Position numbers and translations under genes: made by a program. DNA of 64,000 bases, from the IMG/VR virus record IMGVR_UViG_3300036715_004471, positions 382,542 to 446,541 of that record, one strand, 5' to 3'. Below the pieces are notes generated by a model. That model made no database searches, was not told the DNA's origin, and was given only the letters and a program-made list of their open reading frames with translations. Every line of letters starts with the position of its first letter. Positions within the stretch are counted from its first letter, which is position 1. Positions 7,001 through 50,756 of the stretch are shown here, one piece after another.

Positions 7001-7008
7001 CTAAATCC

Positions 7009-9117: not shown

Positions 9118-9123
9118 AATACA

Positions 9124-29136: not shown

Positions 29137-29150
29137 AATTTTTATAAAAT

Positions 29151-29500
29151 GGAAGAGTTATTCTATAATCCGGGTTCTGTTATTTCAAACAATCATTAAT
29201 CTTGGCGAATAGTCACCTATTCGCTCCAGCACCAACCCGTAAACATCGGGCGAGTAACCCTCAAACGTTTACTATTTGGCTTGCTTCAAATGGGGTTTGC
29301 CGTGCCATGTTTGTTACCAAACATGCGGTGGGCTCTTACTCCACCATTTCACCCTTACCGGAAGCCGAAGCTTCTTAGGCGGTATCTTTCTGTTGCACTT
29401 TCCGTCGTGTCACCACGCCCAGCCGTTAACTGGCATTCTACTCTACGAAGCCCAGAATTTCCTCAGTCTTGCGACCGCGATTGCTCAAACAACTCTTTCC
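29151..29500 (-). ncRNA. rnpB: RNase P RNA (bacterial type A-like)
   Basis: GAGGAAATTCTGGGC, GGAAAGTGCAACAGAAA, AAGGGTGAAA, GGTAAC, AAACCCC..GAAGCAAG, ACAGAACCCGGATTAT; P1 GAGTTGTT/AATAACTC. Confidence 0.93.
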
Positions 29501-30520: not shown

Positions 30521-31081
30521 TTATTCCCAAATATCACACAAATAATCAATTAACTCATCTCCACTAAAAGGAAATGCAGTTGCTACTACATATTTTCTTT
30601 TGTAGTATTCGCTATCTATAGCCTGCTGACTATCTAGTTTATCTATTAGTTTCAGCTGTAACATACGACTATATTTGCCAGCACACCCTCTGGAACAGAA
30701 TGGACCGGCTTTATTTTTCTTAGCTTTATCTCTAATCAGTCTAGGACTACGTTCAAATTCCTTATCACACCATGCACAATTGAATTTAACCAATTTTACA
30801 CGACGAGTATCGTCTCCAGAATGCTGAGAGCGCTCAACTAATCTCAAATTATTGAGATCATTGTTTTCAAAATTGCTATCAATATGATCAACAGTTTCTA
30901 GATTAGGATCTAATTTCCTTCCTAAATGAAGTTCCATAATCCATTTAGGATAGGAAACGGTCCTTCTCTTGCCCTTACGATCCACAACAATTACTATTTG
31001 TCTTGAATCTCTACGGCGATAAGGTCCAAAAACTTTGAATTTATCTGCATATTCCATACCATTATATGGTTTTATATGCAT
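30521..31081 (-). CDS. HNH endonuclease
   Basis: TVDHIDSN..NDLNNL. Confidence 0.85.
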   Translation of the reverse strand: MHIKPYNGMEYADKFKVFGPYRRRDSRQIVIVVDRKGKRRTVSYPKWIMELHLGRKLDPNLETVDHIDSNFENNDLNNLRLVERSQHSGDDTRRVKLVKFNCAWCDKEFERSPRLIRDKAKKNKAGPFCSRGCAGKYSRMLQLKLIDKLDSQQAIDSEYYKRKYVVATAFPFSGDELIDYLCDIWE

Positions 31082-36653: not shown

Positions 36654-37017
36654 TCTGAAAGCATCCTTTCCAAACGAGCGTGAAGTCTTTCAGCTTCATA
36701 TCTAGTCAAAGCAATAAGCGCATCTTCTTCAACAGCTTTTGCGCCTACTTCCATGATTTGATCGTCCCAATTACTGTATCGGAAATCTTCAAAATCTTCT
36801 TTTGAATCTGGTCCCTCTACAGAATAAGAATCTTCAATAGTTTGAAGAGGAGTATTGACGTTAACAACATGAATGTAAAAAATCTTATTCTTACTTGAAG
36901 AATCTTTTGCTTTATGTCTTTTCACAACACACCATTTAATAAAAATTGAAACAACAAGAATTGGAAAGACTATTTTTCGCGTGTTACCATTACACCACAC
37001 TGCAATGTTTAATTTCT

Positions 37018-37092
37018 TGGTTGCAGTGGAGGGAATCGGACCCCCTTCTCGTTCTTATAATGAAATGTAATCCTTCACAGGCATTTGTTTCA
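37018..37092 (-). ncRNA. chimeric Y-RNA 5' half / tRNA 3' half
   Basis: AATGC..AAGGATTACAT followed by T arm and CACTGCA-ACCA. Confidence 0.5.
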
Positions 37093-37215
37093 TGGTCTCT
37101 CAAGTAGGGTTTACGCCTACAACATCCCTTTAATTCAGGAGTTTTACACATTACTTTTCATAATTAAGTTAAGTTAACTGCCCTTAATATGAATTTCACT
37201 TAAACTATCGAGAGA
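37093..37215 (-). pseudogene. degenerate tRNA-like element with ~50-nt AT-rich insert in D-loop
   Basis: TCTCTCGA/TTGAGAGA stem + CCA; GTAGG/CCTAC T stem. Confidence 0.45.
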
Positions 37216-37217
37216 TA

Positions 37218-37292
37218 TGGAGGGTTCGGAGGGACTTGAACCCTCAACAAACTGGTTAAAAGCCAGCTACTCTGCCATTGAGTTACGAACCC
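37218..37292 (-). tRNA. tRNA-Lys(TTT)
   Basis: Cloverleaf, loop CTTTTAA, CCA. Confidence 0.92.
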
Positions 37293-37294
37293 AT

Positions 37295-37558
37295 TTATAC
37301 GCCGTTAATCTTCTTAGAAGTCCAATCATGGAAATCAAAAGTCGATTTACACGGAAAAACTCCAATCAAAGGATGTGCAATGCAATTATGCACAAACCAC
37401 CAACTATGATGTTTGTAGACAGGCTTCTCTTCCTGCTTATATCCTTCGATACGTTTATGAAACCTCATTTCGGCTCCCGACTCATCAGAGTTTGGGAATT
37501 CCTTTTCTTCCTTCTTCGGTTTCACTTCGCCATCTTCTTCATCATATTCCCAAAACAT
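37295..37558 (-). CDS. hypothetical protein
   Basis: WWFVHNCIAHPL..FHDWT. Confidence 0.6.
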   Translation of the reverse strand: MFWEYDEEDGEVKPKKEEKEFPNSDESGAEMRFHKRIEGYKQEEKPVYKHHSWWFVHNCIAHPLIGVFPCKSTFDFHDWTSKKINGV

Positions 37559-37602
37559 TTTATTATCTTTCTATGTTTGTGGTTTGGTAGGGCAACGGGT
37601 AT

Positions 37603-38394
37603 GTGAAAATATATTTTCACATATCAATATTATCATACATATGTATGTTTCAACTATTTACACAAGAGCAATTACAAACTTCCAGATCAAATGATTTGTT
37701 ACCATTAAAATGTCAACAATGCTCTAAAACATTTTTAATATCTAAAAAGTACATAACACAAGTTCTCAATGGTAAATCTAGCCGAGGGTATAAACTACAT
37801 TTTTGTAGTTCTAAATGTTCACAATTGTCAAGAACTACTTCTGAAATTTTTTCATGCACTTTTTGTGATAATCCATTAAAAATGAAATTATCACAAAAAC
37901 AAAGATCAAAATCTGGAAATATTTTTTGTTCTAAATCGTGCGCAGCTAAATATAATAACACTCATAAAACTAAAGGTAGCAGGCGTTCTAAACTTGAAAT
38001 TTGGTTAGAGCAACAACTTTTATCATCTTACCAACAATTAAAAATACAATTCAATTGCAAAGAAACTATCAATTCTGAATTAGATATTTATATTCCAAGT
38101 TTAAAATTAGCATTTGAGTTAAATGGCATCTTTCATTATGAGCCAATTTATGGTTCAGAAAAATTGGCTTCCATTCAAAATAATGATAACAGGAAATTTC
38201 AAGCCTGTTTAGAACAAGACATTGAGCTTGTTATTATAGATACGTCATCTCAAAAATATTTTAAAGAAAAAACATCACAAAAATATCTTAAAATTATAAA
38301 AGATATAATTGATAATAAACTAAATTACTGGTCGTCCCCCCGAGATTCGAACTCGGCACCTCTGCCTTATCAGAGCAGCGTTCTAACCAAATGA
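37603..38394 (+). CDS. Zn-finger + PD-(D/E)xK/Vsr-like endonuclease
   Basis: FCSxxC repeats; ELDIYIPSLKLAFELNGIFHY. Confidence 0.8.
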   Translation: MKIYFHISILSYICMFQLFTQEQLQTSRSNDLLPLKCQQCSKTFLISKKYITQVLNGKSSRGYKLHFCSSKCSQLSRTTSEIFSCTFCDNPLKMKLSQKQRSKSGNIFCSKSCAAKYNNTHKTKGSRRSKLEIWLEQQLLSSYQQLKIQFNCKETINSELDIYIPSLKLAFELNGIFHYEPIYGSEKLASIQNNDNRKFQACLEQDIELVIIDTSSQKYFKEKTSQKYLKIIKDIIDNKLNYWSSPRDSNSAPLPYQSSVLTK

Positions 38395-38405
38395 ACTAGA
38401 GGACG
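38329..38405 (-). tRNA. tRNA-Ile(GAT)
   Basis: Loop CTGATAA, CCA. Confidence 0.9.
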
Positions 38406-38410
38406 GTTAT

Positions 38411-38504
38411 TGTGGATACACAGGGAATCGAACCCTACGCTAGCCTGCTTTCGACTCCTTTCTACCCACCTTGGTAGGTGGACAATGGCGGGCTCTCTAT
38501 ACCC
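38411..38504 (-). ncRNA. D-armless tRNA-like RNA with G3:U70
   Basis: GGGTATA/TGTATCC acceptor, T arm, long central stem. Confidence 0.55.
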
Positions 38505-38508
38505 AAGT

Positions 38509-38586
38509 TGGTGGACACATTGGGAGTCGAACCCAATTTTTCCCGACAATTGTCCGAGCTTTTCATAGGGACGGGTTACTGTGCCC
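38509..38586 (-). ncRNA. D-armless tRNA-like RNA with G3:U70, A73-CCA
   Basis: GGGCACA/TGTGTCC-ACCA, TTGGG-TTCGACT-CCCAA. Confidence 0.6.
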
Positions 38587-38793
38587 AAAATCTTAAACAC
38601 TAAAAATGAGTACGATATCTTCTCCGCCTTCCTTAATAAAAGCATCATAACTCATACTACACGGAGCGTTGAACCAAACATAATTGTTATTATCAATAGT
38701 CCATGTCAACTTTCTATCAGGATTAAATCTAACTTCTTTATCATCTTCCATGATATAAGTGCCAAATTTGTCCATCTTGATCTGTCTTTTCAT

Positions 38794-38869
38794 TGGTGGT
38801 ACCTAACAGGATCGAACTGTTTTCGTCCGCTTTTCAGACGGCGGTCTTGACCACAAATACGAAGGTACC
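38794..38869 (-). tRNA. tRNA-Phe(GAA)
   Basis: Loop CTGAAAA, CCA; weak D and AC stems. Confidence 0.75.
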
Positions 38870-38878
38870 ATATTTGTC

Positions 38879-38953
38879 TGGTGGCTCCTGTTGGTATCGC
38901 GCCAACATTTCCTGCTCTTCAGGCAGGCGCTAATCTATTTCAGCTAAGGAGCC
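38879..38953 (-). tRNA. tRNA-Phe(GAA)
   Basis: Loop CTGAAGA, CCA; atypical T-loop. Confidence 0.8.
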
Positions 38954-38958
38954 ATGTT

Positions 38959-39033
38959 GTAGTTTAATAAGGGCTCGAACCTTAATATATTTTTGTATAT
39001 CGTTTCCACGAGTACTCATAAACATTAAACTAC
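38959..39033 (-). ncRNA. tRNA-like RNA with extended closing stem, no CCA
   Basis: GTAGTTTAAT/ATTAAACTAC, TAAGG-TTCGAGC-CCTTA. Confidence 0.5.
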
Positions 39034-39111
39034 TGGTCGGGCGAGTGGGGATCGAACCCACCTCAAGGTGCTTATAAGACACCCGGATGCAACCAGCTTA
39101 CCTTTCACCCG
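39034..39111 (-). tRNA. tRNA-Ile(TAT)
   Basis: GGTGT-CTTATAA-GCACC, CCA. Confidence 0.82.
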
Positions 39112-39117
39112 GTTGAC

Positions 39118-39291
39118 TCACCAAAGATTATAGTGGCAGGCGAAACATTCGAATAAAAATGTTGAAGATTTTGGTTTTTCTTTAACCATTACTACTTCAT
39201 CATCTTCATTATTTTCATAATGACCGCTCACCATTCTCTTGCAACGATGGCATTCATAAGTAAAATCGCAAGACTTCTCTTCGTTTTCCAT
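39118..39291 (-). CDS. 57-aa Zn-ribbon protein (below ORF-track cutoff)
   Basis: MENEEKSCDFTYECHRCK..FECFACHYNLW. Confidence 0.55.
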   Translation of the reverse strand: MENEEKSCDFTYECHRCKRMVSGHYENNEDDEVVMVKEKPKSSTFLFECFACHYNLW

Positions 39292-39309
39292 GTTGTTTCT
39301 TTCTTTGGC

Positions 39310-39385
39310 TGGCAGGTGTAACGGGTGCTGCCCCCGCTTGGTCTTGCTCGACAGGCAAGTGCAATTGCTGAATTGCTATACACCT
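39310..39385 (-). tRNA. tRNA-Asp(GTC)
   Basis: Loop CTGTCGA, G73-CCA; atypical T-loop. Confidence 0.8.
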
Positions 39386-39388
39386 ATA

Positions 39389-39463
39389 TGGCACCCCCGA
39401 GCGGACTCGAACCGCCCTCATCTGCGTGACAAGCAGACCGCCTCACCCGATGCGTACGGGGGT
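39389..39463 (-). tRNA. tRNA-Asp(GTC)
   Basis: Loop TTGTCAC, G73-CCA. Confidence 0.87.
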
Positions 39464-39483
39464 ATGTTATACAATATATCACT

Positions 39484-39885
39484 TTATTCGTAGATGAAAG
39501 GTCTTTCTAATCTCCCAATTGTTAAATGAAACCAAGGCTTAAACGGAAAGCCTAACATTTCTCTGACTGCCGACAATTCTTCTGAATAAACATCAATCCG
39601 GGCATGGATTCCATTTTCGAATCTTATCACATGGTTGTAATAAAAATCTACTTCGTATCCCTCCAACTTACCCCAGGCTGATGGGTCAGTGACGGTCTCG
39701 CCGCGAACAACTGAGATATGTGTTCCCCACAACCCTTTTGGATTAGATTCTATTCCATATTTTTTCAAATGCCAAGAATAATACTCAGCAATTTGATCGT
39801 CACACGAAAGTAAACACCACCAAGGTTCAAATTGTTTAGATCCTTTTTTCAAATCGAAATGAAGTGTTCCAGATGAACTAAACAT
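39484..39885 (-). CDS. 2H phosphoesterase family protein (paralog of 9782..10183)
   Basis: WGTHISVVRGE..FHLTIGR. Confidence 0.75.
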   Translation of the reverse strand: MFSSSGTLHFDLKKGSKQFEPWWCLLSCDDQIAEYYSWHLKKYGIESNPKGLWGTHISVVRGETVTDPSAWGKLEGYEVDFYYNHVIRFENGIHARIDVYSEELSAVREMLGFPFKPWFHLTIGRLERPFIYE

Positions 39886-39906
39886 GGCTTGTGTCTTTCA
39901 AAAATT

Positions 39907-40076
39907 TGATGACTAGAAATCGTAAAGACGAAGTTTATTGAATTGAATGACCAATCAACAATAATATGGTATTACAGTTTTAACCTTCTGATAATAATAC
40001 AGGACATTCTATTTATTCTCTTAGAAATGCTTGGAGGTTATTGTTATTATTTATGTAGTCCTTACTGCATTCATCA
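39907..40076 (-). ncRNA. Y-RNA-like module with long AT-rich insert
   Basis: TGATG-AATGC-AGTAAGG-ACTACAT..CTTTAC-GATTTCTAGT-CATCA. Confidence 0.65.
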
Positions 40077-40155
40077 TGGTCCGCCCCGCCGGGGTTTCAC
40101 CAGCATTTCCGCCTCATGGCAGCGTCTTGACTATTTAGACGATGGATAGATATTA

Positions 40156-40231
40156 TGGCGATACGTGTGGGAATCGAACCCACCGTCATCCGCTTAACAG
40201 GCGGGCGCTGCACCAAGCCAGCTAACGTACC
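40156..40231 (-). tRNA. tRNA-Asn(GTT)
   Basis: Loop CTGTTAA, CCA. Confidence 0.85.
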
Positions 40232-40356
40232 ATTTAGTTATGTTAGAGTCGGTTACGGTAGATCTTTGCCGTCACTCTCTCTAATCCTAGAGTCAAAGTC
40301 TAGATGCTCTTACATTACATAACAAGGTAACATATTTTCGAAGATATGTTTTCCTT

Positions 40357-40432
40357 TGGCTCATCCCCTCAGATTCGAACTGAGATATCACGAGTTAACA
40401 GCCCGCCTCACGACCAATTGTGATAAGGATGA
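40357..40432 (-). tRNA. tRNA-Asn(GTT)
   Basis: Loop CTGTTAA, CCA. Confidence 0.8.
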
Positions 40433-40435
40433 ATA

Positions 40436-40583
40436 TATTGACGAGAATTGTAAAGATTCGCTGCGCCCTGCACTTTTGTCTTGCGACCCACTTGTGCTAC
40501 CACTCATGCGAGTCTTTGAGTGGATGGGATTCGATACCCATACCATCGAGCATTTTCTATGTAATCCTTAACGTATTCACTAT
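40436..40583 (-). ncRNA. YrlA-like Y RNA (Ro stem + permuted T/acceptor/D arms)
   Basis: Conserved stem plus ATGGG-TATCGAAT-CCCAT, CCACTCA/TGAGTGG closed acceptor, D-like arm. Confidence 0.75.
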
Positions 40584-40586
40584 CAA

Positions 40587-40740
40587 CAATAAACTGAGAG
40601 GAACAGCTCTGACAATAATAACCCTCTTGCCAGTCAGCGGAGCTCGTTTACGTTTTACTTCAAACACGAACAAATTGAAGGTTTTCGGTAATCCATTTCA
40701 ACCGAGACTGTTTTAACCCATTCCTAATCGCAGCTTACTG
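40587..40740 (-). ncRNA. unknown structured RNA
   Basis: CAGTAAGCTG/CAGTTTATTG and AGGAATGG/CTGTTCCT closing helices with 3 internal hairpins. Confidence 0.45.
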
Positions 40741-40741
40741 C

Positions 40742-40817
40742 TGGCTCCGTGGGTACGATTCGAACGTACATATCATTGGTTAACAGCCAATTTCATTGCC
40801 AGTTATGATACCACGGA
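40742..40817 (-). tRNA. tRNA-Asn(GTT)
   Basis: Loop CTGTTAA, CCA. Confidence 0.87.
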
Positions 40818-40926
40818 ATGATGCCAGCGATATGAGTTTAAGCCCACATTCTATTGTCCCCTATATGGACATACTGACAAAGAAAAGTCAACGAGTATAT
40901 ATATCTAGAATAATAGTCATTGACGT

Positions 40927-41142
40927 CTAGTCTTCAACTTTCATTTCATCGATTATGAGATATCTTCCCTGAGATACCCATAACGTTGATCTGTCTCTGG
41001 TCCAAGGACTTGCATGTGGTAAGTCCTTGCAATCTTGCTCGATATATTCTTCAACGTATTTCTCGGCTGATTCGAAAGATTTGAATGCCTTTTGAATATC
41101 ACTACCTTCGTAATCATAGCCCAAAGATACTAAAAAGATCAT
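40927..41142 (-). CDS. hypothetical protein
   Basis: 71-aa ORF inside tRNA array. Confidence 0.55.
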   Translation of the reverse strand: MIFLVSLGYDYEGSDIQKAFKSFESAEKYVEEYIEQDCKDLPHASPWTRDRSTLWVSQGRYLIIDEMKVED

Positions 41143-41156
41143 AAATCAACTTTCTT

Positions 41157-41232
41157 TGGTCGGGGACACGGGATTTGAACCCACACCACATGATTCCGGA
41201 TCACGTACGCTACCAAGTTACGCCAATCCCCG
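41157..41232 (-). tRNA. tRNA-Pro(CGG)
   Basis: C1:G72, A73; loop TCCGGAA. Confidence 0.8.
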
Positions 41233-41234
41233 AT

Positions 41235-41310
41235 ATCAAAATACGTCAGGAATCGAACCTGAACTGTGGGGTGATTACCCCAATCCTGCCCTTAGACGAC
41301 ATATTTTGAT
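41235..41310 (-). ncRNA. tRNA-like RNA with extended closing stem, 6-nt loop, no CCA
   Basis: ATCAAAATATG/CGTATTTTGAT, TGGGG-TAATCA-CCCCA, TCAGG-TTCGATT-CCTGA. Confidence 0.55.
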
Positions 41311-41386
41311 TGGTCGGGGAACTCAGATTTGAACTGAGACTACATGCTTCCTGAGCACGGATGCTACCAGATTACAACATTCCCCG
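41311..41386 (-). tRNA. tRNA-Pro(AGG)
   Basis: C1:G72, A73; loop TCAGGAA. Confidence 0.78.
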
Positions 41387-41389
41387 ATT

Positions 41390-41465
41390 TTGACGACAAA
41401 ATGAAATAAGTTATTTTGATTCGGTTTATAAGACTGAAATGTAAACCTAATTTCTCATTCGTCAA
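41390..41465 (-). ncRNA. short Y-RNA-like module
   Basis: TTGACG-AATGA..AGG-TTTACAT..ATTTTGT-CGTCAA. Confidence 0.7.
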
Positions 41466-41466
41466 T

Positions 41467-41542
41467 TGGTCGGGAATGCCGGATTTGAACCGACACAAGA
41501 TGATTCCAGATCACCGAGACTACCAAATTATCATAATTCCCG
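41467..41542 (-). tRNA. tRNA-Pro(TGG)
   Basis: Loop TCTGGAA, CCA. Confidence 0.78.
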
Positions 41543-41563
41543 AAAATATAACCCCATGGTTAT

Positions 41564-41648
41564 TGGCGGATCTGGAGAGACTCGAACTCTCGATGGGTTT
41601 CCCCGACTGGTTAAGAGCCAGCTGTTATTGCCACTAAACGACAGATCC
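41564..41648 (-). tRNA. tRNA with Lys anticodon (CTT) and long variable arm
   Basis: GCTGG-CTCTTAA-CCAGT, V-arm GGG-GAAA-CCC, G73-CCA. Confidence 0.82.
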
Positions 41649-41656
41649 ATTCTTAA

Positions 41657-41804
41657 AGACAACAAAAATTGAAAGTTATCACGCCTTTCGGCTTCAACGC
41701 GTTTGCCTTTTCGCCACCACCAACAGTAAGTCGATGGGAGGGACTCGAACCCTCAAACCTTTTCAGATATTGATTTTAATATGTAAACCTTCTGACATTT
41801 GTCT
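41657..41804 (-). ncRNA. YrlA-like Y RNA
   Basis: Conserved stem plus GAGGG-TTCGAGT-CCCTC, CCATCGAC/GTTGGTGG closed acceptor, TGGCGAAAAGGCAAACGC D arm. Confidence 0.8.
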
Positions 41805-41813
41805 AGAAGAAGC

Positions 41814-41889
41814 TGGTCGAGCATATTGGATTTGAACCACCCTACATCGCCCCAAACGACGTGTGCAACCAGGCTACACTTTATGCTCG
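41814..41889 (-). tRNA. tRNA-Pro(TGG)
   Basis: Loop TTTGGGG, CCA. Confidence 0.78.
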
Positions 41890-42236
41890 ATTAATTTTTC
41901 TTCATAATGCTCTATTCTGTGGCAATTTGCACACAGAACTTTACATTTAGAAATCTCATTCATAATCTTTTCTTTAGACTTACCACTTTGTACTAGATTA
42001 GTTACTTCTGTAAGTTTTTGTGTTGGATCTATGTGATGGAAATCTAAAACTCTCCAATCACTAATCTCACATTTGAGTAACTTCCTATACTCTATAAACC
42101 ATTCTCTTTTTTCTTTACGAATACGATATTTCGTGGCTTTATCTTTTTTCTTATAATCTTCTCTGTGCTTATTGTTTTCATACCATTGTCTCCAATAAGC
42201 TCGTCTTTCTTCAACGCTGTTAAATTTCTTAGCCAT
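41874..42236 (-). CDS. HNH endonuclease
   Basis: VLDFHHIDP..EISKCKVLCANCHR; stop inside tRNA-Pro. Confidence 0.85.
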   Translation of the reverse strand: MAKKFNSVEERRAYWRQWYENNKHREDYKKKDKATKYRIRKEKREWFIEYRKLLKCEISDWRVLDFHHIDPTQKLTEVTNLVQSGKSKEKIMNEISKCKVLCANCHRIEHYEEKLIEHKV

Positions 42237-42254
42237 GCTAAGAATATATCAGCT

Positions 42255-42333
42255 TGGTCGGGCATGCTGGATTTGAACCAGCAAAATCTCCTGTACCCAA
42301 AACAGGCGCGATACCAGATTACGCTAATGCCCG
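42255..42333 (-). tRNA. tRNA-Pro(TGG)
   Basis: Loop TTTGGGT, CCA. Confidence 0.88.
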
Positions 42334-42386
42334 ATCTATATTGTTTCATTCCCGCATCAAAAAGCGCAGAAACAATTAAACTGCCT

Positions 42387-42473
42387 TGGTCCCCCATAGT
42401 GGAATCGAACCACATAGCACATAGGCACTCGTTTTACAGACGAGGGATCCTCCCAGGGATCTAGTTACAGGGG
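42387..42473 (-). tRNA. tRNA-Tyr(GTA), atypical C1:G72
   Basis: CTCGT-CTGTAAA-ACGAG, CCA. Confidence 0.75.
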
Positions 42474-42562
42474 ATAATTTCAACTGATTGTGTGGCGCCC
42501 GACATTCAGTAGGAGCACATAATCGCCTGGTGTCCCTACTTATTCAATTGAAGTTAAACTTA

Positions 42563-42619
42563 GCTGACAAAAATTGATAAGTTTTTACAACCCAAATGTA
42601 AACCTATCGAGCATTCAGC
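42563..42619 (-). ncRNA. minimal Y-RNA-like module
   Basis: GCTG-AATGC-TCGATAGG-TTTACAT..CTTATC-AATTTTTGT-CAGC. Confidence 0.7.
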
Positions 42620-42695
42620 TGGAGTCGAAAGTAGGAATCGAACCTACTGTGACAGTTTTGCAGACTGTTCCTCAAAGCCATCGAGGACTTTCGAC
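42620..42695 (-). tRNA. tRNA-Cys(GCA)
   Basis: Loop CTGCAAA, U73-CCA. Confidence 0.85.
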
Positions 42696-42747
42696 TTATC
42701 AAGGCTCTCGCCTTGGTCCAACCACCGAAGTGAATTGGGGGATGTTA

Positions 42748-42809
42748 GACGACAAAAATTGAATAAGATGTTGTTTATCCTAAAATGTAATCCTATTCTA
42801 GCATTCGTC
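42748..42809 (-). ncRNA. minimal Y-RNA-like module
   Basis: GACG-AATGC-TAGAATAGG-ATTACAT..CTTATTC-AATTTTTGT-CGTC. Confidence 0.7.
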
Positions 42810-42810
42810 A

Positions 42811-42884
42811 TGGTTGGGATGTATGGATTCGAACCATAATAAGAAGATTCAAAGTCTTCTGTCCTGCCGTTGAACGACACCCCA
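42811..42884 (-). tRNA. tRNA-Gln(TTG)
   Basis: Loop CTTTGAA, CCA. Confidence 0.92.
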
Positions 42885-42888
42885 ATAA

Positions 42889-43329
42889 TTATCTACCCAA
42901 TCTCCACCAACCAAAATCTTTAGCAGTTTTTCTTCTGTGACAATTTGCGCATCTAACAACACATTTAGATATTTCTAAAGCTATTTTATCTAAGGATGCG
43001 CAATCATTAATCATACTGGAAATGCTGCATTCTTTATTTTCAAGATGATCAAAATCCAAAACAATCAAATCTTTTTCACCACAATCCACACAACCATTTT
43101 TTAGATGTGAAACAATAAAATCTTGTATTAAAGGCTTTAATGTTTCTTTTCTATTATAAATACGTTGTTTTACTTTTTCAGTATTAAGTAAGTAATGTTT
43201 CTTACCATTTTCTAAATTGCACAACTTACAAAGATTTTGTCTTCCATCTTTAGATAATTTCTTTTTGTTAAAATCATCTAGCGATTTTTTATCTTTACAG
43301 ATTGTACAAACTTTGAATTCTTCACTCAT
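42889..43329 (-). CDS. HNH endonuclease
   Basis: CVDCGE..VLDFDH..EISKCVVRCANCHR. Confidence 0.88.
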   Translation of the reverse strand: MSEEFKVCTICKDKKSLDDFNKKKLSKDGRQNLCKLCNLENGKKHYLLNTEKVKQRIYNRKETLKPLIQDFIVSHLKNGCVDCGEKDLIVLDFDHLENKECSISSMINDCASLDKIALEISKCVVRCANCHRRKTAKDFGWWRLGR

Positions 43330-43365
43330 AACTTTGATATCAAAGTATTAGTAGTTTTCAAAGTT

Positions 43366-43437
43366 TGGTTGCGACGGCAAGATTCGAACTTGCGGGGGCT
43401 GGCTTATGAGACCTGCTTGAATCCAATTCTCATCACA
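43366..43437 (-). tRNA. tRNA-Met(CAT), short D arm
   Basis: Loop CTCATAA, CCA. Confidence 0.7.
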
Positions 43438-43441
43438 ATAG

Positions 43442-43530
43442 TGGTTGCAACAGTAAGACATTACCACTTACGGTCTCCCCCAGATGAACGGGAGGCGGGA
43501 GGCGGGATATGTATTCTTCCCTATATTGCA
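43442..43530 (-). pseudogene. degenerate tRNA-Met-like
   Basis: TGCAATA/TGTTGCA-ACCA, TTCAT loop, CGCCTCC duplication, aberrant T-loop. Confidence 0.5.
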
Positions 43531-43608
43531 TGGTTGCGGGGGCTGGAGTCGAACCAACTATTACAAGGCTTATGAGACCTGTGTGATATTCCGTTTCACT
43601 CTCCCACA
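43531..43608 (-). tRNA. tRNA-Met(CAT)
   Basis: Loop CTCATAA, CCA. Confidence 0.85.
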
Positions 43609-43612
43609 ATAT

Positions 43613-43689
43613 TGGGGTGTCGTACGAGTTTCGATCTCGCCTAAGATTGATTCACAGTCAATCGGGGTCACCAGCTCCCTCACGACACC
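43613..43689 (-). tRNA. tRNA-His(GTG)
   Basis: G-1:C73, loop CTGTGAA, CCA. Confidence 0.85.
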
Positions 43690-43785
43690 ATAATATTTAA
43701 AAAAGTACTTCATGAACACCCGCAATTTATAACTGCTCAGTTTGTAACAAGATATCCTTGTTCACCACACCTTTTTTAAATACAG

Positions 43786-43853
43786 CAGGATGGGAGGGAA
43801 TCGAACCCTCTTCCAGAGGGTTGGAGGCTCTGTTGCGCCCTGCACTCCATCCT
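43786..43853 (-). tRNA. tRNA-Trp(CCA), short D arm, no encoded CCA
   Basis: Loop CTCCAAC, canonical T arm. Confidence 0.6.
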
Positions 43854-43908
43854 ATATCGTCTCTCCGATTGTCATGCCTAGATCGATTGATCGGCGGCAT
43901 TCCCTTGA

Positions 43909-43983
43909 TGGTGGGGCAGCTTGGACTTTAACCAAGGACCTCAACTCTTACTGAGTTGCGCTCTTTCGCTGAGCTAATGCCCC
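43909..43983 (-). tRNA. tRNA with aberrant anticodon loop (CAGTAAG); identity unclear
   Basis: Good acceptor and D arms, CCA; no U33; T-loop TTAAAGT. Confidence 0.5.
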
Positions 43984-43987
43984 ATTG

Positions 43988-44059
43988 CACCTCTAGTAGG
44001 ACTCGAACCTACAACATTCGGTTTAGAATACCGACACTCTTCCATTGAGTTATAGAGGC
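43988..44059 (-). tRNA. tRNA-Arg(TCT), no encoded CCA
   Basis: TCGGT-ATTCTAA-ACCGA. Confidence 0.75.
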
Positions 44060-44064
44060 ATATC

Positions 44065-44169
44065 GTATTGACGAATATTGAAGAAATTTTTTCCTGTCAC
44101 CGGACATCACGGAGTCGAACCGTCACGGATTGTTTCCTATACAATGTAATTCCCTCGAGCATTCAATAC
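44065..44169 (-). ncRNA. Y-RNA-like module with T-arm insert
   Basis: GTATTG-AATGC..ATTACAT..ACGG-TTCGACT-CCGT..AATATTCGT-CAATAC. Confidence 0.7.
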
Positions 44170-44258
44170 AAACTTTTTAAAATCTGTGTATCTACTATAT
44201 CATCTTATTGATATGTTGGAACGTTTTTTGTTTTCTTTCGTCGTCCCAGGTGACTCAT

Positions 44259-44286
44259 ACTATAACACCGTTGATGGGACCGTCAA
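44259..44286 (-). promoter_or_regulatory. sigma70-like promoter heading the tRNA/Y-RNA array
   Basis: TTGACG-N16-TATAGT with TGn extended -10. Confidence 0.6.
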
Positions 44287-45606: not shown

Positions 45607-46299
45607 TCAGGGATTAAAAAATCCTGAACCACCACCAACACGGAATCTAGTAGTAGCTGCTGACGATGTAGCATACAGTTTTTTGGTTCCAGCAGAAGTA
45701 GCCTCATATTGCAATGTATTGTCCTTAGCTACCCCTAATGAGGCGCCAGCACCGAAAGCATCAATATTAGCTCCCATGAACACAAATTCCCAATTATACT
45801 TAGATTTTTGATGATCAATCATTTCCTTAATGCGCTCAAGAGGATATTTCAAATCATTAAAACGAGGAACAGATCCGTTCTTATAGAATCCTTTAGAAGG
45901 CATAGCCACGGCACCATCTTTAAGAAGATGGCTAGAATTTTCCTCACCATCAGTAATGATCAAGAATAAAATCTTAGATGGTCTGTCTTCTTCTTTCATA
46001 TTGGATAATTTTTCGCCCAACTTATCAACAGATAAGCCAACAGCATCTAATAATGCAGTTCCTCCAGAAGCTTTATAAGTTTTATTGTTTAATAGTGGAA
46101 CAGAAGCTAGTGGAATATAATCGTGCACGATATCTGGCTTTGTATTGAAAATACAAAGCGAAACCATTGCTTCACCTGGCGCCGCTTGCTGATCTGTAAG
46201 AAATTGGTTCACTCCACCAATAGTATCATTAACTAATGGTGCCATTGAACCACTACCGTCTAGAAGAATATTAATTGAAGTTAAATTTGGTTTTGTCAT
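45607..46299 (-). CDS. vWA domain protein
   Basis: LDGSGSM, GGTALLDA, ITDGEENSS, FMGAN. Confidence 0.88.
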   Translation of the reverse strand: MTKPNLTSINILLDGSGSMAPLVNDTIGGVNQFLTDQQAAPGEAMVSLCIFNTKPDIVHDYIPLASVPLLNNKTYKASGGTALLDAVGLSVDKLGEKLSNMKEEDRPSKILFLIITDGEENSSHLLKDGAVAMPSKGFYKNGSVPRFNDLKYPLERIKEMIDHQKSKYNWEFVFMGANIDAFGAGASLGVAKDNTLQYEATSAGTKKLYATSSAATTRFRVGGGSGFFNP

Positions 46300-47487: not shown

Positions 47488-47710
47488 GTTTATCTTCTCT
47501 TGGAAGAGATTTTATTTTTAACTCTATTCTGAGGGCACAACTTTTGTTATCTACTTCAAAAGATTTGATCAATACAACGGGGAGACGACCTTTTGTATAT
47601 TTGGCGCCTTTTCTTTTGTTATGGGTCTCAATTCTTTTTTCAAGATTGTTCGTAATTCCACAATATAAAGAATCATCAGAACACCTGAGAAGATAAACAA
47701 ACCATTTCAT
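47435..47710 (-). CDS. GIY-YIG nuclease (UPF0213/YhbQ-like)
   Basis: VYLLRCSDDSLYCGITNNLEKR..H...GAKYT. Confidence 0.9.
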   Translation of the reverse strand: MKWFVYLLRCSDDSLYCGITNNLEKRIETHNKRKGAKYTKGRLPVVLIKSFEVDNKSCALRIELKIKSLPREDKLKFSLSDYDCTQEKSIP

Positions 47711-48537: not shown

Positions 48538-49153
48538 TCTCGATAATCGTTATAAATTTCTAATATACCCAATTGGTTAATAATTAAATCATGCCCCAGA
48601 ATTTCTGGCATATGAAATAAATCTTCCAATGAATCAATTTCTAATTCGTAAATCGGTGGCTTAGGTTCATTGCCATCATATTCCATTTCTGATGGTACAG
48701 CTAATATTCCCAATTTTTCTAGAATCTCTTTTGCGTCGCCCGAAGTGCTAGATACCAATATTTTCATATTATTTTCTTTCAAAACAACGTTTTGAGCCAT
48801 GTAATAACCAAGAACAGCACTCATTACAATCAAAACAATGAAGTGGTCCTATCAAATTTCCGGAACATAATGCTTTGATTATTTTCCACCACCTACCAGA
48901 AGATTCTAATACTTTCATAAAATCAACCTCCACACCAGCCACAGCCGCCAGGAATATAGCCACATTTTCTGCAAAGTGTTCTTTTACAATGTCCACAATA
49001 ACTATATGGTTCTTGAATTAAATCTTTTTTGCACGCAATGCATTTGAGATTTTTCCACCAATCATTATTTTCTGCCTTATTGTTTTTTAATCTTTGTAGT
49101 AAACTTGCTAATATTTTCACACTGAACTCCAAATAATTTTGAACCAGAAACAC

Positions 49154-49188
49154 GATTTGCCGGCAGGGAATAACCCTGCCGGCAAATC
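49154..49188 (-). terminator. strong hairpin after rsr
   Basis: GATTTGCCGGCAGGG/CCCTGCCGGCAAATC. Confidence 0.7.
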
Positions 49189-49193
49189 ATATA

Positions 49194-50756
49194 TCAGATT
49201 TGAACAGACTCAATGGTTGAGACCCATAGGTCTTTGTTGTTACCAAGTTCAAGGAACTTTGCAATTACATCAAAAACTTGATCACTAAAACCACCTACGT
49301 TAAGGATATTCTCCTTATCGTAAGCTTGAGTAGAGGTATTCGGAGTAAGATCAATACAAACAAGCTTTGCTTTCTTGTTACGAGCTTTGAACTCAGTCCA
49401 AGCTTTCATCGTAGCGGTACCACGACTTCTGCCTGAATCAACCCAAGACTCGTTATCGCTTACATAAATGACTAGATCGCCCATGGCTTTTCTACGATTC
49501 AACTCTTCCATTGGAAGCGAACAGTTAGTGCCACCTCCGCCAAATCCTGCTAGGATCTTGGCGTTAGTCATAATTGAATCCATTGGATTCAGCTTATGAG
49601 CATGAACTCTAGTATCGAATGGTAATACTTCTACATCAGAATTTCTGCGCATAATAGCTGCGGCAACCAGGGCTGCCACATCAATACAACGCATCTTGCT
49701 GGATACATTTCCACGATTTCCGGTGACCGGAGAATTCATGGATCCAGAAGTATCTACCATTACATAAACCTTTTTGTTTTCAAACTCTGGAATGTTCTCC
49801 AACGCATGCTCAGCAGCCTTTTGCAAAGCTACAGAAACCTTAGCAGGAACACTTGCATCCATATTCAAAAACGTAGTGAACAACTGGTACGGGAATACCT
49901 TTGCTCTCTTAACTTGCTCCTTATCCTCCAACTTGGCACAGATAAGCCCTAACAGATCACGATCTGCTAACACATTATGACGAGCAAATGTGTTAAGGTT
50001 CTGTCTAATCTGGTTCCAAGTTGCATTGACTGCAATCTTTTTCCAGTGTTCAGCAGTCAATGGTAAAGCCGTAAGCTTTTGGAAAGGTACATGCGGGATT
50101 TCTTTTGACATATCTTTCTTGAAGTCTTCAAACTGCTTAACTAGAGCACACAAGTCTTCCTTTGCATACTCCTTATCTAGCAAGTACCCAAATATAGCAG
50201 AACGTTGCTTATTGGTTGGCTTCGGATGAACCAACTTGATGATATCTTGCAATGACGGATCATTACCAACATCTGCCGCAAACAACTGCTCATCATTCAA
50301 AGATTCCAAATACTTTTGGATTAATCTTTTAGGGCGAGTACCTAAAGACTTACGTCCAGTAGCCCCTGAACGAATAACCTGCACGAAATTTCTCAACATC
50401 TTTGGAGAATCAACTACCTTATCAAAGATTTTGGACAAAAGCTCGGAGTCCTTTCCAGCAACTACCGCAGCCAAAACCGCAGGCATATCTTTCATTAAAC
50501 CCTCTTGACGAGAGTATACTGCCAAGCGAGCAACGTACTCAGCCGGCAACTTGTTAGCTAACTCTAACACTTTCTTAAGTTGATCTTCATCAGATACATA
50601 ATATGTTCCGTTAAAACAACCAGTCATAGCTAATTGAGCCAATGCGGCTTTGTCAGACAAACTATAAGCTTGTCCACCAGCATTGTTAACTACATTGGTC
50701 GGCTTTACAGCCTTTGAAGACACAAACTTGCTAGCAAATAATTTCTTTGATGACAT
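49194..50756 (-). CDS. rsr: Ro60/Rsr TROVE + vWA RNA-binding protein
   Basis: NNAGGQAY, LAQLAMTG..GTYY, MKDMP, HPKP, VFPYQL, DTSGSM, GGGTNC, VSDNESW, VGGFSD. Confidence 0.93.
   Translation of the reverse strand: MSSKKLFASKFVSSKAVKPTNVVNNAGGQAYSLSDKAALAQLAMTGCFNGTYYVSDEDQLKKVLELANKLPAEYVARLAVYSRQEGLMKDMPAVLAAVVAGKDSELLSKIFDKVVDSPKMLRNFVQVIRSGATGRKSLGTRPKRLIQKYLESLNDEQLFAADVGNDPSLQDIIKLVHPKPTNKQRSAIFGYLLDKEYAKEDLCALVKQFEDFKKDMSKEIPHVPFQKLTALPLTAEHWKKIAVNATWNQIRQNLNTFARHNVLADRDLLGLICAKLEDKEQVKRAKVFPYQLFTTFLNMDASVPAKVSVALQKAAEHALENIPEFENKKVYVMVDTSGSMNSPVTGNRGNVSSKMRCIDVAALVAAAIMRRNSDVEVLPFDTRVHAHKLNPMDSIMTNAKILAGFGGGGTNCSLPMEELNRRKAMGDLVIYVSDNESWVDSGRSRGTATMKAWTEFKARNKKAKLVCIDLTPNTSTQAYDKENILNVGGFSDQVFDVIAKFLELGNNKDLWVSTIESVQI

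What the first reader, a model, noticed from the sequence alone, without database searches (positions are those of the whole stretch)
37018..44169. Array of eight modular Y-RNA-like RNAs interleaved with tRNAs, linked to a phage Ro60/Rsr gene
Seen: eight minus-strand elements at 37018-37092, 39907-40076, 40436-40583, 41390-41465, 41657-41804, 42563-42619, 42748-42809 and 44065-44169. They share [stem]-AAT(G/A)N-n(7-9, usually ending AGG)-(A/T)(T/C)TACAT ... (A/G)AT-pyrimidine-rich-GT-[stem]; the first element has only the 5' half. Outer stems differ but co-vary (TGATG/CATCA, TTGACG/CGTCAA, AGACA/TGTCT, GCTG/CAGC, GTATTG/CAATAC). Inserts differ: permuted T-acceptor-D tRNA mimic (2 copies), T arm only, tiny loops, and a ~115-nt AT-rich insert. 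Five begin 0-1 nt after a tRNA or tRNA-like CCA. Known: bacterial YrlA Y RNAs pair a Ro-binding stem with a permuted tRNA-like domain, and some phages encode Rsr/YrlA. Inference: one Ro scaffold with a library of swappable RNA adaptors or decoys released by tRNA processing. I do not know of a description of such an expanded repertoire.
Basis: partly seen in the sequence, partly recalled or inferred. Interest (0 to 1): 0.92.

Follow-up and report, generated by a model that had tools for sequence, protein, structure and literature searches.

The report
Eight Y RNAs in a huge-phage tRNA array
A roughly 447-kb phage carries a Ro60 gene and eight different Y-RNA-like small RNA genes wedged between its tRNA genes, which extends a known RNA-protein partnership into a much larger, modular set than has been described for bacteria or phages.

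Summary
The window holds exactly eight minus-strand copies of a two-helix module. It has a conserved internal loop, 5' AAUGC and 3' AAUUYUUG, plus a UUACAU box. Both helices co-vary strongly, within the window and across 63 distinct homologues from related phage contigs.

One correction: element 1 is complete (36945-37093) and carries a third tRNA-like insert.

The module matches the Ro-binding end of bacterial YrlA/YrlB Y RNAs. It scores well below the Rfam threshold, but so does the region of a mycobacteriophage locus where Rfam finds its YrlA match.

The ORF at 49194-50756 is a full-length Ro60/Rsr with an intact MIDAS motif. All 111 model hits found in Ro-anchored phage loci lie on the Ro strand. 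There were no hits in 724 kb of unrelated viral DNA.

Inserts fall into three size classes:
- Minimal hairpins.
- A T-arm plus a small hairpin.
- Long inserts, mostly permuted T-acceptor-D tRNA mimics. About half of these (14 of 29) carry an encoded N-CCA before a loop of variable length.

Modules abut tRNAs 10-15 times more often than chance, so release by tRNA-processing enzymes is likely.

Ro binding, discrete transcripts and function remain untested. I rate this a new variant of a known kind, of moderately high interest.

The parts
44064..44170 (-). Y module E8, medium class. Outer stem UGUAUUGA/UCAAUACG. The insert is a T-arm (GACGGUUCGACUCCGUG) plus a small hairpin. It is the first element after a candidate promoter and ends 4 nt before tRNA-Arg.
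   Evidence: R2 83 bits; fold; orthologue in L002, similar T-arm modules in L008, L009, L013/14, L016, L018, L019
42747..42810 (-). Y module E7, short class with a 16-nt apical region. Stem GACGA/UCGUC. It has an exact GNCGAANG motif and starts directly after the CCA of tRNA-Gln.
   Evidence: R2 57 bits; fold; sequence
42562..42620 (-). Y module E6, short class. Stem (A)GCUGA/UCAGC(U). It starts at or just after the CCA of tRNA-Cys. Rfam gives a weak YrlB match.
   Evidence: R2 47 bits; Rfam YrlB 22.1 bits; fold z=-3.4
41655..41806 (-). Y module E5, long class. It has a canonical T-arm (GAGGGUUCGAGUCCCUC), a closed acceptor-like stem of 7-8 bp (5-nt loop in the MFE fold) and a D-like arm. It lies 9 nt after tRNA-Pro and 6-8 nt before tRNA-Lys.
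   Evidence: R2 80 bits
41389..41466 (-). Y module E4, short class. Stem UUGACGA/UCGUCAA. It has an exact GNCGAANG motif and sits between two tRNA-Pro genes, 0 nt after the CCA and 2 nt before the next tRNA.
   Evidence: R2 58 bits
40434..40584 (-). Y module E3, long class. It has a T-like arm with an 8-nt loop, a 7-bp closed acceptor-like stem (CCACUCA/UGAGUGG) and a D-like region. The outer stem has one G-A mismatch. It ends 1 nt before tRNA-Asn.
   Evidence: R2 91 bits; Rfam YrlA full-length match 23.8 bits; orthologues in L017 and L021
39905..40078 (-). Y module E2, long class. The insert is about 124 nt, A/U-rich and not significantly structured. Stem UGAUGA/UCAUCA. It starts after a tRNA-like ...GGACCA end.
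   Evidence: R2 70 bits; fold z=-0.9; orthologue L017:19429-19628 has the same stems and a diverged insert
36945..37093 (-). Y module E1, long class and complete. Order: T-arm GGGGGUCCGAUUCCCUC, acceptor 3' strand CACUGCA, A, CCA, 13-nt loop, acceptor 5' strand UGCAGUG, D-arm GUGUAAUGGUAACAC. This is a permuted tRNA with an encoded CCA.
   Evidence: R2 108 bits; Rfam YrlA 25.7 bits over model 1-114; orthologue alignment with compensatory changes
49194..50756 (-). Ro60/Rsr homologue, 520 aa, with a TROVE/HEAT ring, a vWA domain and a DTSGSM MIDAS motif.
   Evidence: Pfam vWA_Ro60 1e-18 and TROVE 2e-7; NCBIfam Rsr 5e-22, below cutoff; full-length alignment to PDB 9KOP/9L5Y, 9NEN, 2NVO, 1YVP
49150..49192 (-). 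Terminator-like hairpin with a 19-bp stem, directly after the Ro60 stop codon. It suggests that Ro60 and the RNA array are separate transcription units.
   Evidence: consensus scan only
44259..44286 (-). Candidate sigma-70-type promoter (TTGACG-16-TG-TATAGT), about 90 nt upstream of E8. It may be the start of the Y RNA/tRNA transcription unit.
   Evidence: consensus scan; promoter-like sites are not enriched in the region, so this is weak
29150..29496 (-). Phage-encoded bacterial class A RNase P RNA. It is a plausible processing enzyme for the tRNA/Y RNA precursor and for the tRNA-like domain of E1.
   Evidence: Rfam RF00010 288 bits; its role here is inferred

Best explanation
The eight elements are paralogous Y RNAs of the bacterial YrlA/YrlB kind, and they serve the phage's own Ro60.

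Anatomy. Each has the same Ro60-docking end. This consists of a 5-8 bp terminal helix whose sequence is free to vary, an asymmetric internal loop (5' AUGC(n); 3' (C)AAUUYUUG), and a second helix with a conserved A-U/G-U/G-C core followed by UACAU. Each carries a different distal domain:
- Three are permuted tRNA mimics in the order T-arm, acceptor, D-arm.
- One has a T-arm plus a small hairpin.
- Three are minimal hairpins.
- One has a long A/U-rich loop.

Processing (inferred). The elements are transcribed as part of the tRNA operon, which is separate from Ro60. They are released by tRNA-end processing. The 5' end would be the nucleotide after the upstream tRNA's CCA. The 3' end would be set by RNase P cleavage at the next tRNA. 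The E1 type encodes N-CCA followed by a loop of variable length. It is probably opened by RNase P and 3' trimming into a two-piece RNA with real tRNA-like ends, as was shown for M. smegmatis YrlA.

Function (inferred by analogy). The resulting set of Ro60-Y RNPs would gate Ro60 or tether it to different partners, such as host PNPase or other exonucleases and tRNA-binding proteins. This would let the phage control RNA surveillance and turnover during infection.

Shown: the sequence family, its structure, its linkage to Ro60 and its abutment to tRNAs.
Inferred: Ro60 binding, the processing route and partner diversity.
For: Copy number and structure:
- Exactly eight strong model hits in the window (the eight are also the model's seeds).
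- Covariation in both helices among the eight copies.
- Across 63 distinct homologues, 82% of cells are paired against 61% when shuffled, with 252 double-sided changes against 93, and 0 of 500 shuffles reaching the score. Slid controls give 32-52% paired.

Similarity to YrlA:
- Same loop letters and layout as the Rfam YrlA consensus.
- Sub-threshold YrlA/YrlB matches at E1, E3 and E6.
- The YrlA match just upstream of Ro in a mycobacteriophage locus and the Mx1 element score no better, at 28.8 and 32 bits.
- The published GNCGAAN0-1G motif (PMC4201824) is exact in E4 and E7.

Ro60: a full-length homologue with a MIDAS motif.

Linkage to Ro60:
- 74 hits in 20 loci with 66-100% Ro identity, all downstream of Ro and on its strand.
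- 37 hits in loci with 41-50% Ro identity, all on the Ro strand, many directly adjacent to Ro.
- 0 hits in 724 kb of unrelated viral DNA.
- A motif-anchored search that did not use Ro recovered contigs which carry Ro wherever the flank allows a check.

Inserts:
- Three discrete insert size classes, several conserved as orthologous groups.
- 29 of 45 long modules have a T-arm, a 6-7 bp acceptor and a D-arm. 14 of these have N-CCA.

tRNA abutment: 69% of modules abut a tRNA against about 3% by chance. CCA lies exactly at the start of the stem in 38 of 65.

Precedents:
- Thermus phage Ro60 binds two phage Yrl RNAs and host PNPase in vitro (PMC12135203).
Against: - There is no expression, end-mapping or binding data.
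- The Rfam YrlA and YrlB gathering scores are not reached.
- In the window the array lies 5-14 kb from Ro60, not within the roughly 2 kb usual in bacteria, and a terminator-like hairpin separates them.
- A cut exactly after an encoded CCA, with no spacer, needs an activity that cannot be verified here. A tRNA-Y RNA fusion cannot be excluded.
- Linkage was measured mostly on loci chosen because they encode Ro60. Two motif-positive contigs could not be checked for Ro.
- No PNPase or other obvious partner gene is present in the window.
Confidence: 0.75

Rival explanations
1. The modules act in cis as punctuation or processing elements of the polycistronic tRNA precursor. They might be recognition structures for a phage or host endonuclease, or folding insulators between tRNAs. 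In this reading their resemblance to Y RNAs is superficial, and Ro60 is merely a neighbour in a tRNA-rich region.
For: - The modules abut tRNAs tightly on one or both sides.
- In the window, Ro60 is 5 kb away behind a terminator-like hairpin.
- Ro genes also sit inside tRNA arrays in Streptomyces phages and in Mx1, so linkage to tRNAs could produce linkage to Ro.
Against: - In more distant relatives the modules sit directly next to Ro60. Examples are L197 (four modules just after Ro), L175 and L206 (just before Ro) and L143.
- The conserved loop letters are those of YrlA.
- A plain spacer has no need for T-acceptor-D mimics with an encoded CCA.
- Most tRNA-tRNA junctions in the window have no such module.
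Confidence: 0.1
2. The elements are mainly tRNA decoys or baits, independent of Ro60. They would soak up host tRNA-targeting defence nucleases or tRNA-modifying enzymes, and the shared two-helix end would only stabilise them.
For: - Three of the eight copies, and 29 of 45 long homologues, are good tRNA mimics.
- The neighbourhood holds RNA-repair and counter-defence genes: RNA ligase, a weak 2H phosphoesterase match, NAMPT, ADP-ribosylglycohydrolases and PARG.
- The array also holds further non-canonical tRNA-like structures.
Against: - The short class has no tRNA-like part, yet it is the most numerous (42 of 75) and keeps the conserved loop.
- The most conserved part of every copy is the YrlA-type end, not the mimic.
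- Co-orientation with Ro60 is complete.
Confidence: 0.1
3. The copies are decaying duplicates or a small mobile repeat spreading within tRNA arrays, with no function of their own.
For: L016 has four identical 61-nt copies in tandem at a 142-bp period. A possible degenerate 3' half lies at about 40660-40700 in the window.
Against: - Compensatory changes maintain both helices across 63 distinct sequences.
- Copies are diverged yet retained at syntenic positions, with E8-E7-E6-E5 in the same order in L002.
- Insert classes are conserved as orthologous groups.
Confidence: 0.03

Closest known systems
YrlA (Rfam RF02553): bacterial and mycobacteriophage Y RNA with a tRNA-like domain (Chen et al. 2014, PMC4201824)
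   Same: - Terminal helix, then an AAUGC / A-rich...UUG internal loop, then a second helix.
- A distal T-arm, acceptor-like stem and D-arm in permuted order.
- Encoded on the Ro60 strand.
- The M. smegmatis member is cut by RNase P and gains CCA, which matches the N-CCA design of E1.
   Different: - Scores are only 24-26 bits against the 69-bit threshold.
- The motif is GNCGAANG in only 2 of 8 copies. In the others the C-G is replaced by co-varying pairs.
- A UUACAU box is conserved here.
- The elements lie 5-14 kb from Ro60, inside a tRNA array, and there are three such copies per genome segment.
- CCA is encoded in the genome in E1 (and in 14 of 29 tRNA-mimic homologues), rather than added afterwards.
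YrlB / Yrn2: short hairpin Y RNAs without a full tRNA mimic (PMC4201824; Rfam RF02565)
   Same: E4, E6 and E7 are 59-78 nt hairpins that carry only the Ro-type end and a small apical loop. E6 gives a weak YrlB match.
   Different: There are three paralogues here and up to four or five in relatives, each fused to tRNA ends. The Rfam score is far below threshold (22 against 97 bits).
Thermus phage phiLo Ro60 with Yrl1/Yrl2 (PMC12135203; PDB 9KOP, 9L5Y)
   Same: A phage Ro60 with more than one phage-encoded Y-like RNA. The window's Ro60 aligns over its full length with phiLo Ro60, which is its best PDB match.
   Different: phiLo has two RNAs directly upstream of Ro60 with a CGAA bulge. Neither a tRNA array nor a tRNA-like module is reported for them.
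Multi-paralogue Y RNA sets in animals (human Y1, Y3, Y4, Y5; nematode stem-bulge RNAs)
   Same: One Ro60 protein, several RNAs that share the Ro-binding stem, and variable distal loops thought to recruit different partners (my own knowledge; PMC4030889 and PMC4450293 appeared but were not read).
   Different: Those are Pol III genes, with no tRNA mimic and no co-processing with tRNAs.
Permuted (two-piece) tmRNA and permuted tRNA genes
   Same: E1-type inserts have the order T-arm, acceptor 3' strand, CCA, intervening loop, acceptor 5' strand. E1 gives a weak match to the permuted tmRNA model (17.7 bits).
   Different: There is no tag reading frame or pseudoknots, and ARAGORN calls no tmRNA. 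The anticodon arm is replaced by the Ro-type helices.
Small stable RNAs encoded within the phage T4 tRNA cluster (species 1 and 2; from my own knowledge, not checked here)
   Same: Non-tRNA small RNAs that are co-transcribed and co-processed with phage tRNAs.
   Different: No sequence relation was tested, and T4 has no Ro60.

Membership tests
Bacterial/phage Y RNA (YrlA/YrlB class) | Specific binding to, and stabilisation by, Ro60/Rsr | not testable with these tools
   This needs RIP, EMSA or Northern blots in a Ro60 deletion. The only proxy here is genomic linkage.
Bacterial/phage Y RNA (YrlA/YrlB class) | Encoded near the Ro60 gene and on the same strand | tested here: met
   Same strand, 5.0-13.8 kb downstream of Ro60 in the window. 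All 111 hits in Ro-anchored loci are on the Ro strand, and in more distant relatives they lie directly next to Ro. The distance in the window exceeds the roughly 2 kb described for D. radiodurans and S. Typhimurium (PMC4201824).
Bacterial/phage Y RNA (YrlA/YrlB class) | 5'-proximal GNCGAAN0-1G motif within a 5'/3' terminal helix and internal loop | tested here: inconclusive
   The motif is exact in E4 and E7 (GACGAAUG). The other six read NNYRAAUR, with the C-G position co-varying as a base pair. The invariant part here is A-AUG.
Bacterial/phage Y RNA (YrlA/YrlB class) | At least one Y RNA per genome with a tRNA-like domain (T-arm, acceptor-like stem, D-arm) | tested here: met
   E1, E3 and E5 qualify. 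E1 aligns arm for arm with the YrlA model. Compensatory changes occur in the T and acceptor stems across orthologues.
Rfam RF02553 YrlA / RF02565 YrlB (as curated models) | Score at or above the gathering threshold (69 and 97 bits) | tested here: not met
   25.7 and 23.8 bits for YrlA, and 22.1 bits for YrlB. The models are narrow: the YrlA match just upstream of Ro in a mycobacteriophage locus reaches only 28.8 bits and Mx1 reaches 32.
Ro60/Rsr (TROVE) protein, for ORF 49194-50756 | TROVE/HEAT-repeat ring plus a C-terminal vWA domain with a MIDAS motif | tested here: met
   Pfam vWA_Ro60 and TROVE score above their cutoffs. The ORF aligns over its full length with five solved Ro60 structures, and the DTSGSM motif is present. 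The NCBIfam Rsr equivalog scores only 78 bits against a cutoff of 900, so this is a divergent family member.
Transfer RNA | Cloverleaf with an anticodon arm, called by ARAGORN or the Rfam tRNA model | tested here: not met
   None of the eight elements is called as a tRNA. The tRNA-like inserts are permuted and lack an anticodon arm.

The most novel reading that the evidence does not exclude
A clade of huge phages runs a programmable Ro60 system. One Ro60 ring is loaded with any of eight or more interchangeable Y-RNA adaptors, produced in fixed proportion with tRNAs from the same precursor. Each adaptor would direct Ro60, and a recruited host exonuclease, to a different class of RNA or protein. 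The E1 type would be cut open by the phage's own RNase P into a two-piece tRNA mimic with a free CCA end. That mimic could be charged, or could engage tRNA-directed host defences as a Ro60-tethered bait.
Probability: 0.2. Interest if true: 0.85.

Novelty: new variant of a known kind. Interest (0 to 1): 0.62.

Why it matters
The role of the variable distal domains of Y RNAs is still unresolved. In particular, nobody knows why bacterial Y RNAs mimic tRNA.

This phage clade offers a natural series. The Ro-type end is the same throughout, while the distal modules fall into discrete, conserved classes, and more than 100 homologues are available for comparison.

It also shows that Y RNAs can be built into tRNA operons. 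Their ends would then be made by tRNA-processing enzymes, which ties Ro60 biology to the large tRNA and translation investment of huge phages.

A cultivable relative, Myxococcus phage Mx1, carries a homologous Ro60 (48% identity) and two module copies. The idea can therefore be tested at the bench.

Tried and rejected
- Model R1, built from two short copies, found only the three short elements because long inserts were penalised. I replaced it with R2, built from all eight.
- MAFFT alignments misplace the 3' strand of the inner helix. I therefore used model-based realignment and an alignment-free chimera test.
- The ninth regex hit at 20703-20682 is rejected, because it gives no model hit.
- A 14-base collection pattern returned only chance matches. 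One of them, L058, does encode a Ro60 with the pattern 140 nt upstream and a weak model hit.
- R2 finds nothing in the actinophage Ro loci, which are too diverged.
- The megablast search of the region against deposited phages found nothing.
- The genome-contig search gave only two short MAG contigs (Sandaracinaceae and 'Deltaproteobacteria', 51% Ro identity) with no modules in their small flanks.
- No Y-like RNA lies directly next to Ro60 in the window.
- The two Y RNA reviews were not held in the library, and the supplement of Chen 2014 listing phage Y RNAs was not available. Prior counts per phage could not be checked.
- The promoter scan shows no enrichment, so transcription units are only suggested.

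Full report
**What the window is**

The window matches IMG/VR contig IMGVR_UViG_3300036715_004471 (446,541 bp) at 100% over the Ro60 protein. The window contains:
- 38 ARAGORN tRNAs, all on the minus strand between 10.7 and 44.1 kb.
- A full-length class A RNase P RNA (288 bits).
- A GH25 lysozyme, DNA methylases, HNH endonucleases, an RNA ligase, NAMPT, ADP-ribosylglycohydrolases, a PARG and EF-Ts.

The closest deposited phage is Myxococcus phage Mx1, with 48% Ro60 identity. This is a huge phage.

**Checking the observation**

- A regex for the 5' motif (AAT[GA]...RGR.WYTACAT) hits 9 times on the minus strand and never on the plus strand. Shuffles give 0.78.
- Covariance model R2, built from the eight copies with two helices, finds exactly those eight in the 64 kb at 47-108 bits. 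The next hit scores 15.8 bits, E=0.78, and the ninth regex hit at 20703 is not among the hits.

The common architecture is:
- An outer helix of 5-8 bp.
- A 5' loop, AUGC plus 1-4 nt.
- An inner helix of 7-10 bp with a conserved core: 5' AGG paired to 3' CUU, which includes a G-U pair.
- UACAU, then a variable insert.
- A 3' loop, (C)AAUUYUUG.
- The outer helix 3' strand.

One correction is needed. Element 1 is not a half copy. It continues to 36945, with the 3' loop CAAUUCUUG and the stem UUGUUUCA that pairs with UGAAACAA.

**Is the structure real?**

Among the eight copies:
- 6 of 8 outer-helix pairs change on both sides. No shuffle of 500 reaches the observed covariation score, and sliding the partner by 1-3 columns collapses pairing from 79% to 36-52%.
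- In an alignment-free test, I joined each 5' half to each 3' half. Cognate pairs fold at a mean of -12.2 kcal/mol against -6.9 for non-cognate pairs. The cognate assignment is the best of all 40,320 permutations.

Across relatives (74 hits, 63 distinct):
- Outer-helix positions 4-7 are paired in essentially every sequence, using AU, GC, CG and UA.
- The innermost pair is an invariant A-U.
- The inner helix keeps a G-U in 50 of 63 sequences.
- Overall 82% of cells are paired against 61% shuffled, and 252 cells show double-sided change against 93.

That alignment was fitted to the model, which favours pairing. The slid and shuffled controls and the chimera test do not depend on the fit.

**What it resembles**

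With permissive thresholds, Rfam gives YrlA at E1 (25.7 bits, covering the model from position 1 to 114) and at E3 (23.8 bits), and YrlB at E6 (22.1 bits).

The E1 alignment shows the same parts in the same order as YrlA:
- Terminal helix, AAUGC loop and inner helix.
- T-arm, acceptor-like hairpin and D-arm.
- Inner helix 3' strand, A/U-rich loop ending in UUG, and terminal helix.

These scores are far below the gathering threshold of 69 bits, but the model is narrow. The YrlA match just upstream of the annotated Ro gene in a mycobacteriophage locus reaches only 28.8 bits. Mycobacteriophages are a group in which YrlA was described. The Mx1 element reaches 32 bits.

The published signature GNCGAAN0-1G (PMC4201824) is exact in E4 and E7. 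In the other copies its C-G position is one of the co-varying pairs.

**The protein**

ORF 49194-50756 has the Ro60 vWA and TROVE domains. It aligns from residue 20 to about residue 505 with solved Ro60 structures from Thermus phage phiLo, human, Xenopus and Deinococcus, and it keeps the MIDAS DTSGSM motif. phiLo Ro60 was shown to bind two phage-encoded Y-like RNAs and to form a complex with host PNPase in vitro (PMC12135203).

**Linkage to Ro60**

- Twenty IMG/VR loci with Ro60 at 66-100% identity, on contigs up to 480 kb, carry 74 model hits. All are on the Ro60 strand and downstream of it. The two loci without hits have less than 3 kb of downstream flank.
- Sixty loci with more distant Ro60 (about 39-50% identity, plus one at 68%) carry 37 hits. 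All are again on the Ro60 strand and often directly beside the gene. Examples are four modules just after Ro60 in L197, two or three just before it in L175 and L206, and five after it in L143.
- Mx1 has two, inside its tRNA array upstream of Ro60.
- A search anchored on the RNA motif alone recovered 12 contigs with true modules. Eight were already known to encode Ro60. Two more show Ro60 within the fetched stretch. Two could not be checked.
- 724 kb of unrelated viral contigs gave no hit.

Most of this sampling is conditioned on Ro60. A full 2x2 census is still needed.

**The inserts**

The lengths of 75 inserts are trimodal: 9-26 nt (42 copies), 56-60 nt (9 copies) and 77-173 nt (24 copies). 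In the window:
- E4, E6 and E7 are short.
- E8 is medium, with a T-arm plus a small hairpin.
- E1, E2, E3 and E5 are long.

Several types recur as orthologous groups in other contigs, and the order E8-E7-E6-E5 is kept in L002.

Among 45 distinct modules of at least 100 nt, 29 have a T-arm followed directly by a 6-7 bp acceptor-like helix and then a D-arm. That D-arm is often the canonical UAGCUCAGUUGGUAGAGC or UGGUGUAAUGGUAGCAC. In 14 of the 29, the acceptor 3' strand is followed by N-CCA and then a loop of 5-97 nt.

E1 is of this kind: CACUGCA-A-CCA, a 13-nt loop, then UGCAGUG. Its orthologues show compensatory changes in both the T and the acceptor stems, and the loop length varies from about 12 to about 100 nt.

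E3 and E5 have closed acceptor-like stems without CCA. The 124-nt insert of E2 is A/U-rich and has no significant fold (z = -0.9). Its orthologue keeps the stems but not the insert sequence.

**Relation to tRNAs**

In the window:
- E4, E6 and E7 begin at the nucleotide after the CCA of a called tRNA.
- E1 and E2 begin after tRNA-like ...CCA ends that ARAGORN does not call.
- E8, E5, E4 and E3 end 1-8 nt before the next tRNA.

Across 65 non-redundant modules:
- 37% abut a called tRNA upstream, 51% abut one downstream, and 69% abut at least one. Random placement within the arrays gives about 3%.
- 63% have CCA at the 5' junction. In 38 of 65 the CCA lies 4-7 nt before the invariant A, which is exactly at the start of the outer helix.

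A terminator-like hairpin with a 19-bp stem follows Ro60, and a promoter-like site lies about 90 nt upstream of E8. These are consensus matches only.

**How it most likely works**

Shown: a structured RNA family with a YrlA-type end, linked to and co-oriented with phage Ro60, diversified into discrete insert classes, and fused end to end with tRNAs.

Inferred:
- The RNAs are cut out of the tRNA precursor. RNase P would act at the downstream tRNA. A 3'-end activity would cut at or trim to the upstream CCA.
- Ro60 then binds the common end.
- The E1 type is probably opened at the acceptor by RNase P and trimmed to CCA. This was shown for M. smegmatis YrlA, whose 7-bp acceptor makes it an RNase P substrate (PMC4201824). 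The phage's own RNase P RNA may contribute.

By analogy with the Deinococcus, Salmonella and phiLo systems, the RNPs would gate Ro60 or tether it to exonucleases and other partners, with the insert deciding the partner. I give the identification as Ro60-partner Y RNAs about 0.75, the processing route about 0.6, and distinct partners for each class about 0.4.

**Rivals**

- Cis-acting processing punctuation is weakened by the relatives in which modules sit beside Ro60, and by the YrlA-type loop.
- Ro60-independent tRNA decoys do not explain the dominant short class.
- Decaying repeats are contradicted by the compensatory changes and the synteny.

**Novelty**

Already known:
- Bacterial Y RNAs with tRNA-like domains.
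- At least two Y RNAs in each characterised species, cut from one precursor in M. smegmatis.
- YrlA-like sequences in 22 phages (PMC4201824), and two Yrl RNAs in phiLo (PMC12135203).

I found no description of the following:
- Eight diverged paralogues in one phage.
- Their discrete modular classes.
- Their insertion into tRNA arrays with shared ends.
- The encoded N-CCA permuted design.

Two reviews and the 2014 supplement could not be read. I therefore rate this a new variant of a known kind, with interest about 0.6.

Noticed in passing
window 29150-29496 (-): A full-length bacterial class A RNase P RNA (288 bits) sits inside the phage genome, among the tRNA genes. In a search of papers on RNase P RNA and jumbo or huge phages, none of the 15 top-ranked papers contained the term 'RNase P RNA'.
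   Followed up: partly
window 43787-43853 (-), 38410-38600 (-), 37094-37207 (-), 40079-40155 (-): Several tRNA-like structures are not called by ARAGORN. They have acceptor-type ends and T-arms, and some end in CCA. One is about 114 nt long with acceptor UCUCUCG/UGAGAGA-CCA. They give weak mascRNA and tmRNA-type matches. They may be further tRNA mimics or interrupted tRNAs.
   Followed up: no
window about 40585-40741 (-): The spacer between tRNA-Asn and E3 contains CCUUCAAUUUGUUCGUG, which resembles the 3' half of a Y module. There is no model hit, so it may be a degenerate ninth copy.
   Followed up: no
L016:14616-15102: Four tandem copies of a short module (the last three 61 nt) lie at a 142-bp period in a related 354-kb contig. 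This is a recent local amplification of a short-class Y RNA.
   Followed up: no
window 42889-43329 (-), 41874-42236 (-), 39484-39885 (-), 30521-31081 (-): Small ORFs are interspersed with the tRNAs and Y RNAs. One further along the tRNA region is HNH_3, two have cysteine/histidine-rich motifs with no Pfam hit, and one gives a weak 2H phosphoesterase match.
   Followed up: partly
window 25-9813 (-), 23387-23947 (-) and 47707-48537 (-): There is a cluster of NAD/ADP-ribose and RNA-end genes: two ADP-ribosylglycohydrolases, NAMPT, a nucleotidyltransferase, an RNA ligase (PF09414), a histidine phosphatase and a microbial PARG. This suggests counter-defence and RNA repair functions near the Ro60 system.
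   Followed up: partly
window 45607-46299 (-); L001:15898-16551: A stand-alone vWA-domain protein lies 3-4 kb from Ro60 in both the window (weak Pfam match) and Mx1 (annotated as such). It might be a conserved companion of phage Ro60.
   Followed up: no
L001:9732-10109: Mx1 carries a tmRNA (118 bits) in the same tRNA array that holds its two Y modules. One Mx1 module (8606-8711) is covered by an annotated 'hypothetical protein' CDS (8610-8732), which is probably a mis-annotation.
   Followed up: partly
L172, L173 (genome contigs): The only bacterial-genome matches to this Ro60 (51% identity) are short contigs in MAGs of Sandaracinaceae (Myxococcota) and 'Deltaproteobacteria'. Together with the similarity to Mx1, this hints at a myxobacterial host range, or at phage fragments binned into those MAGs.
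   Followed up: no
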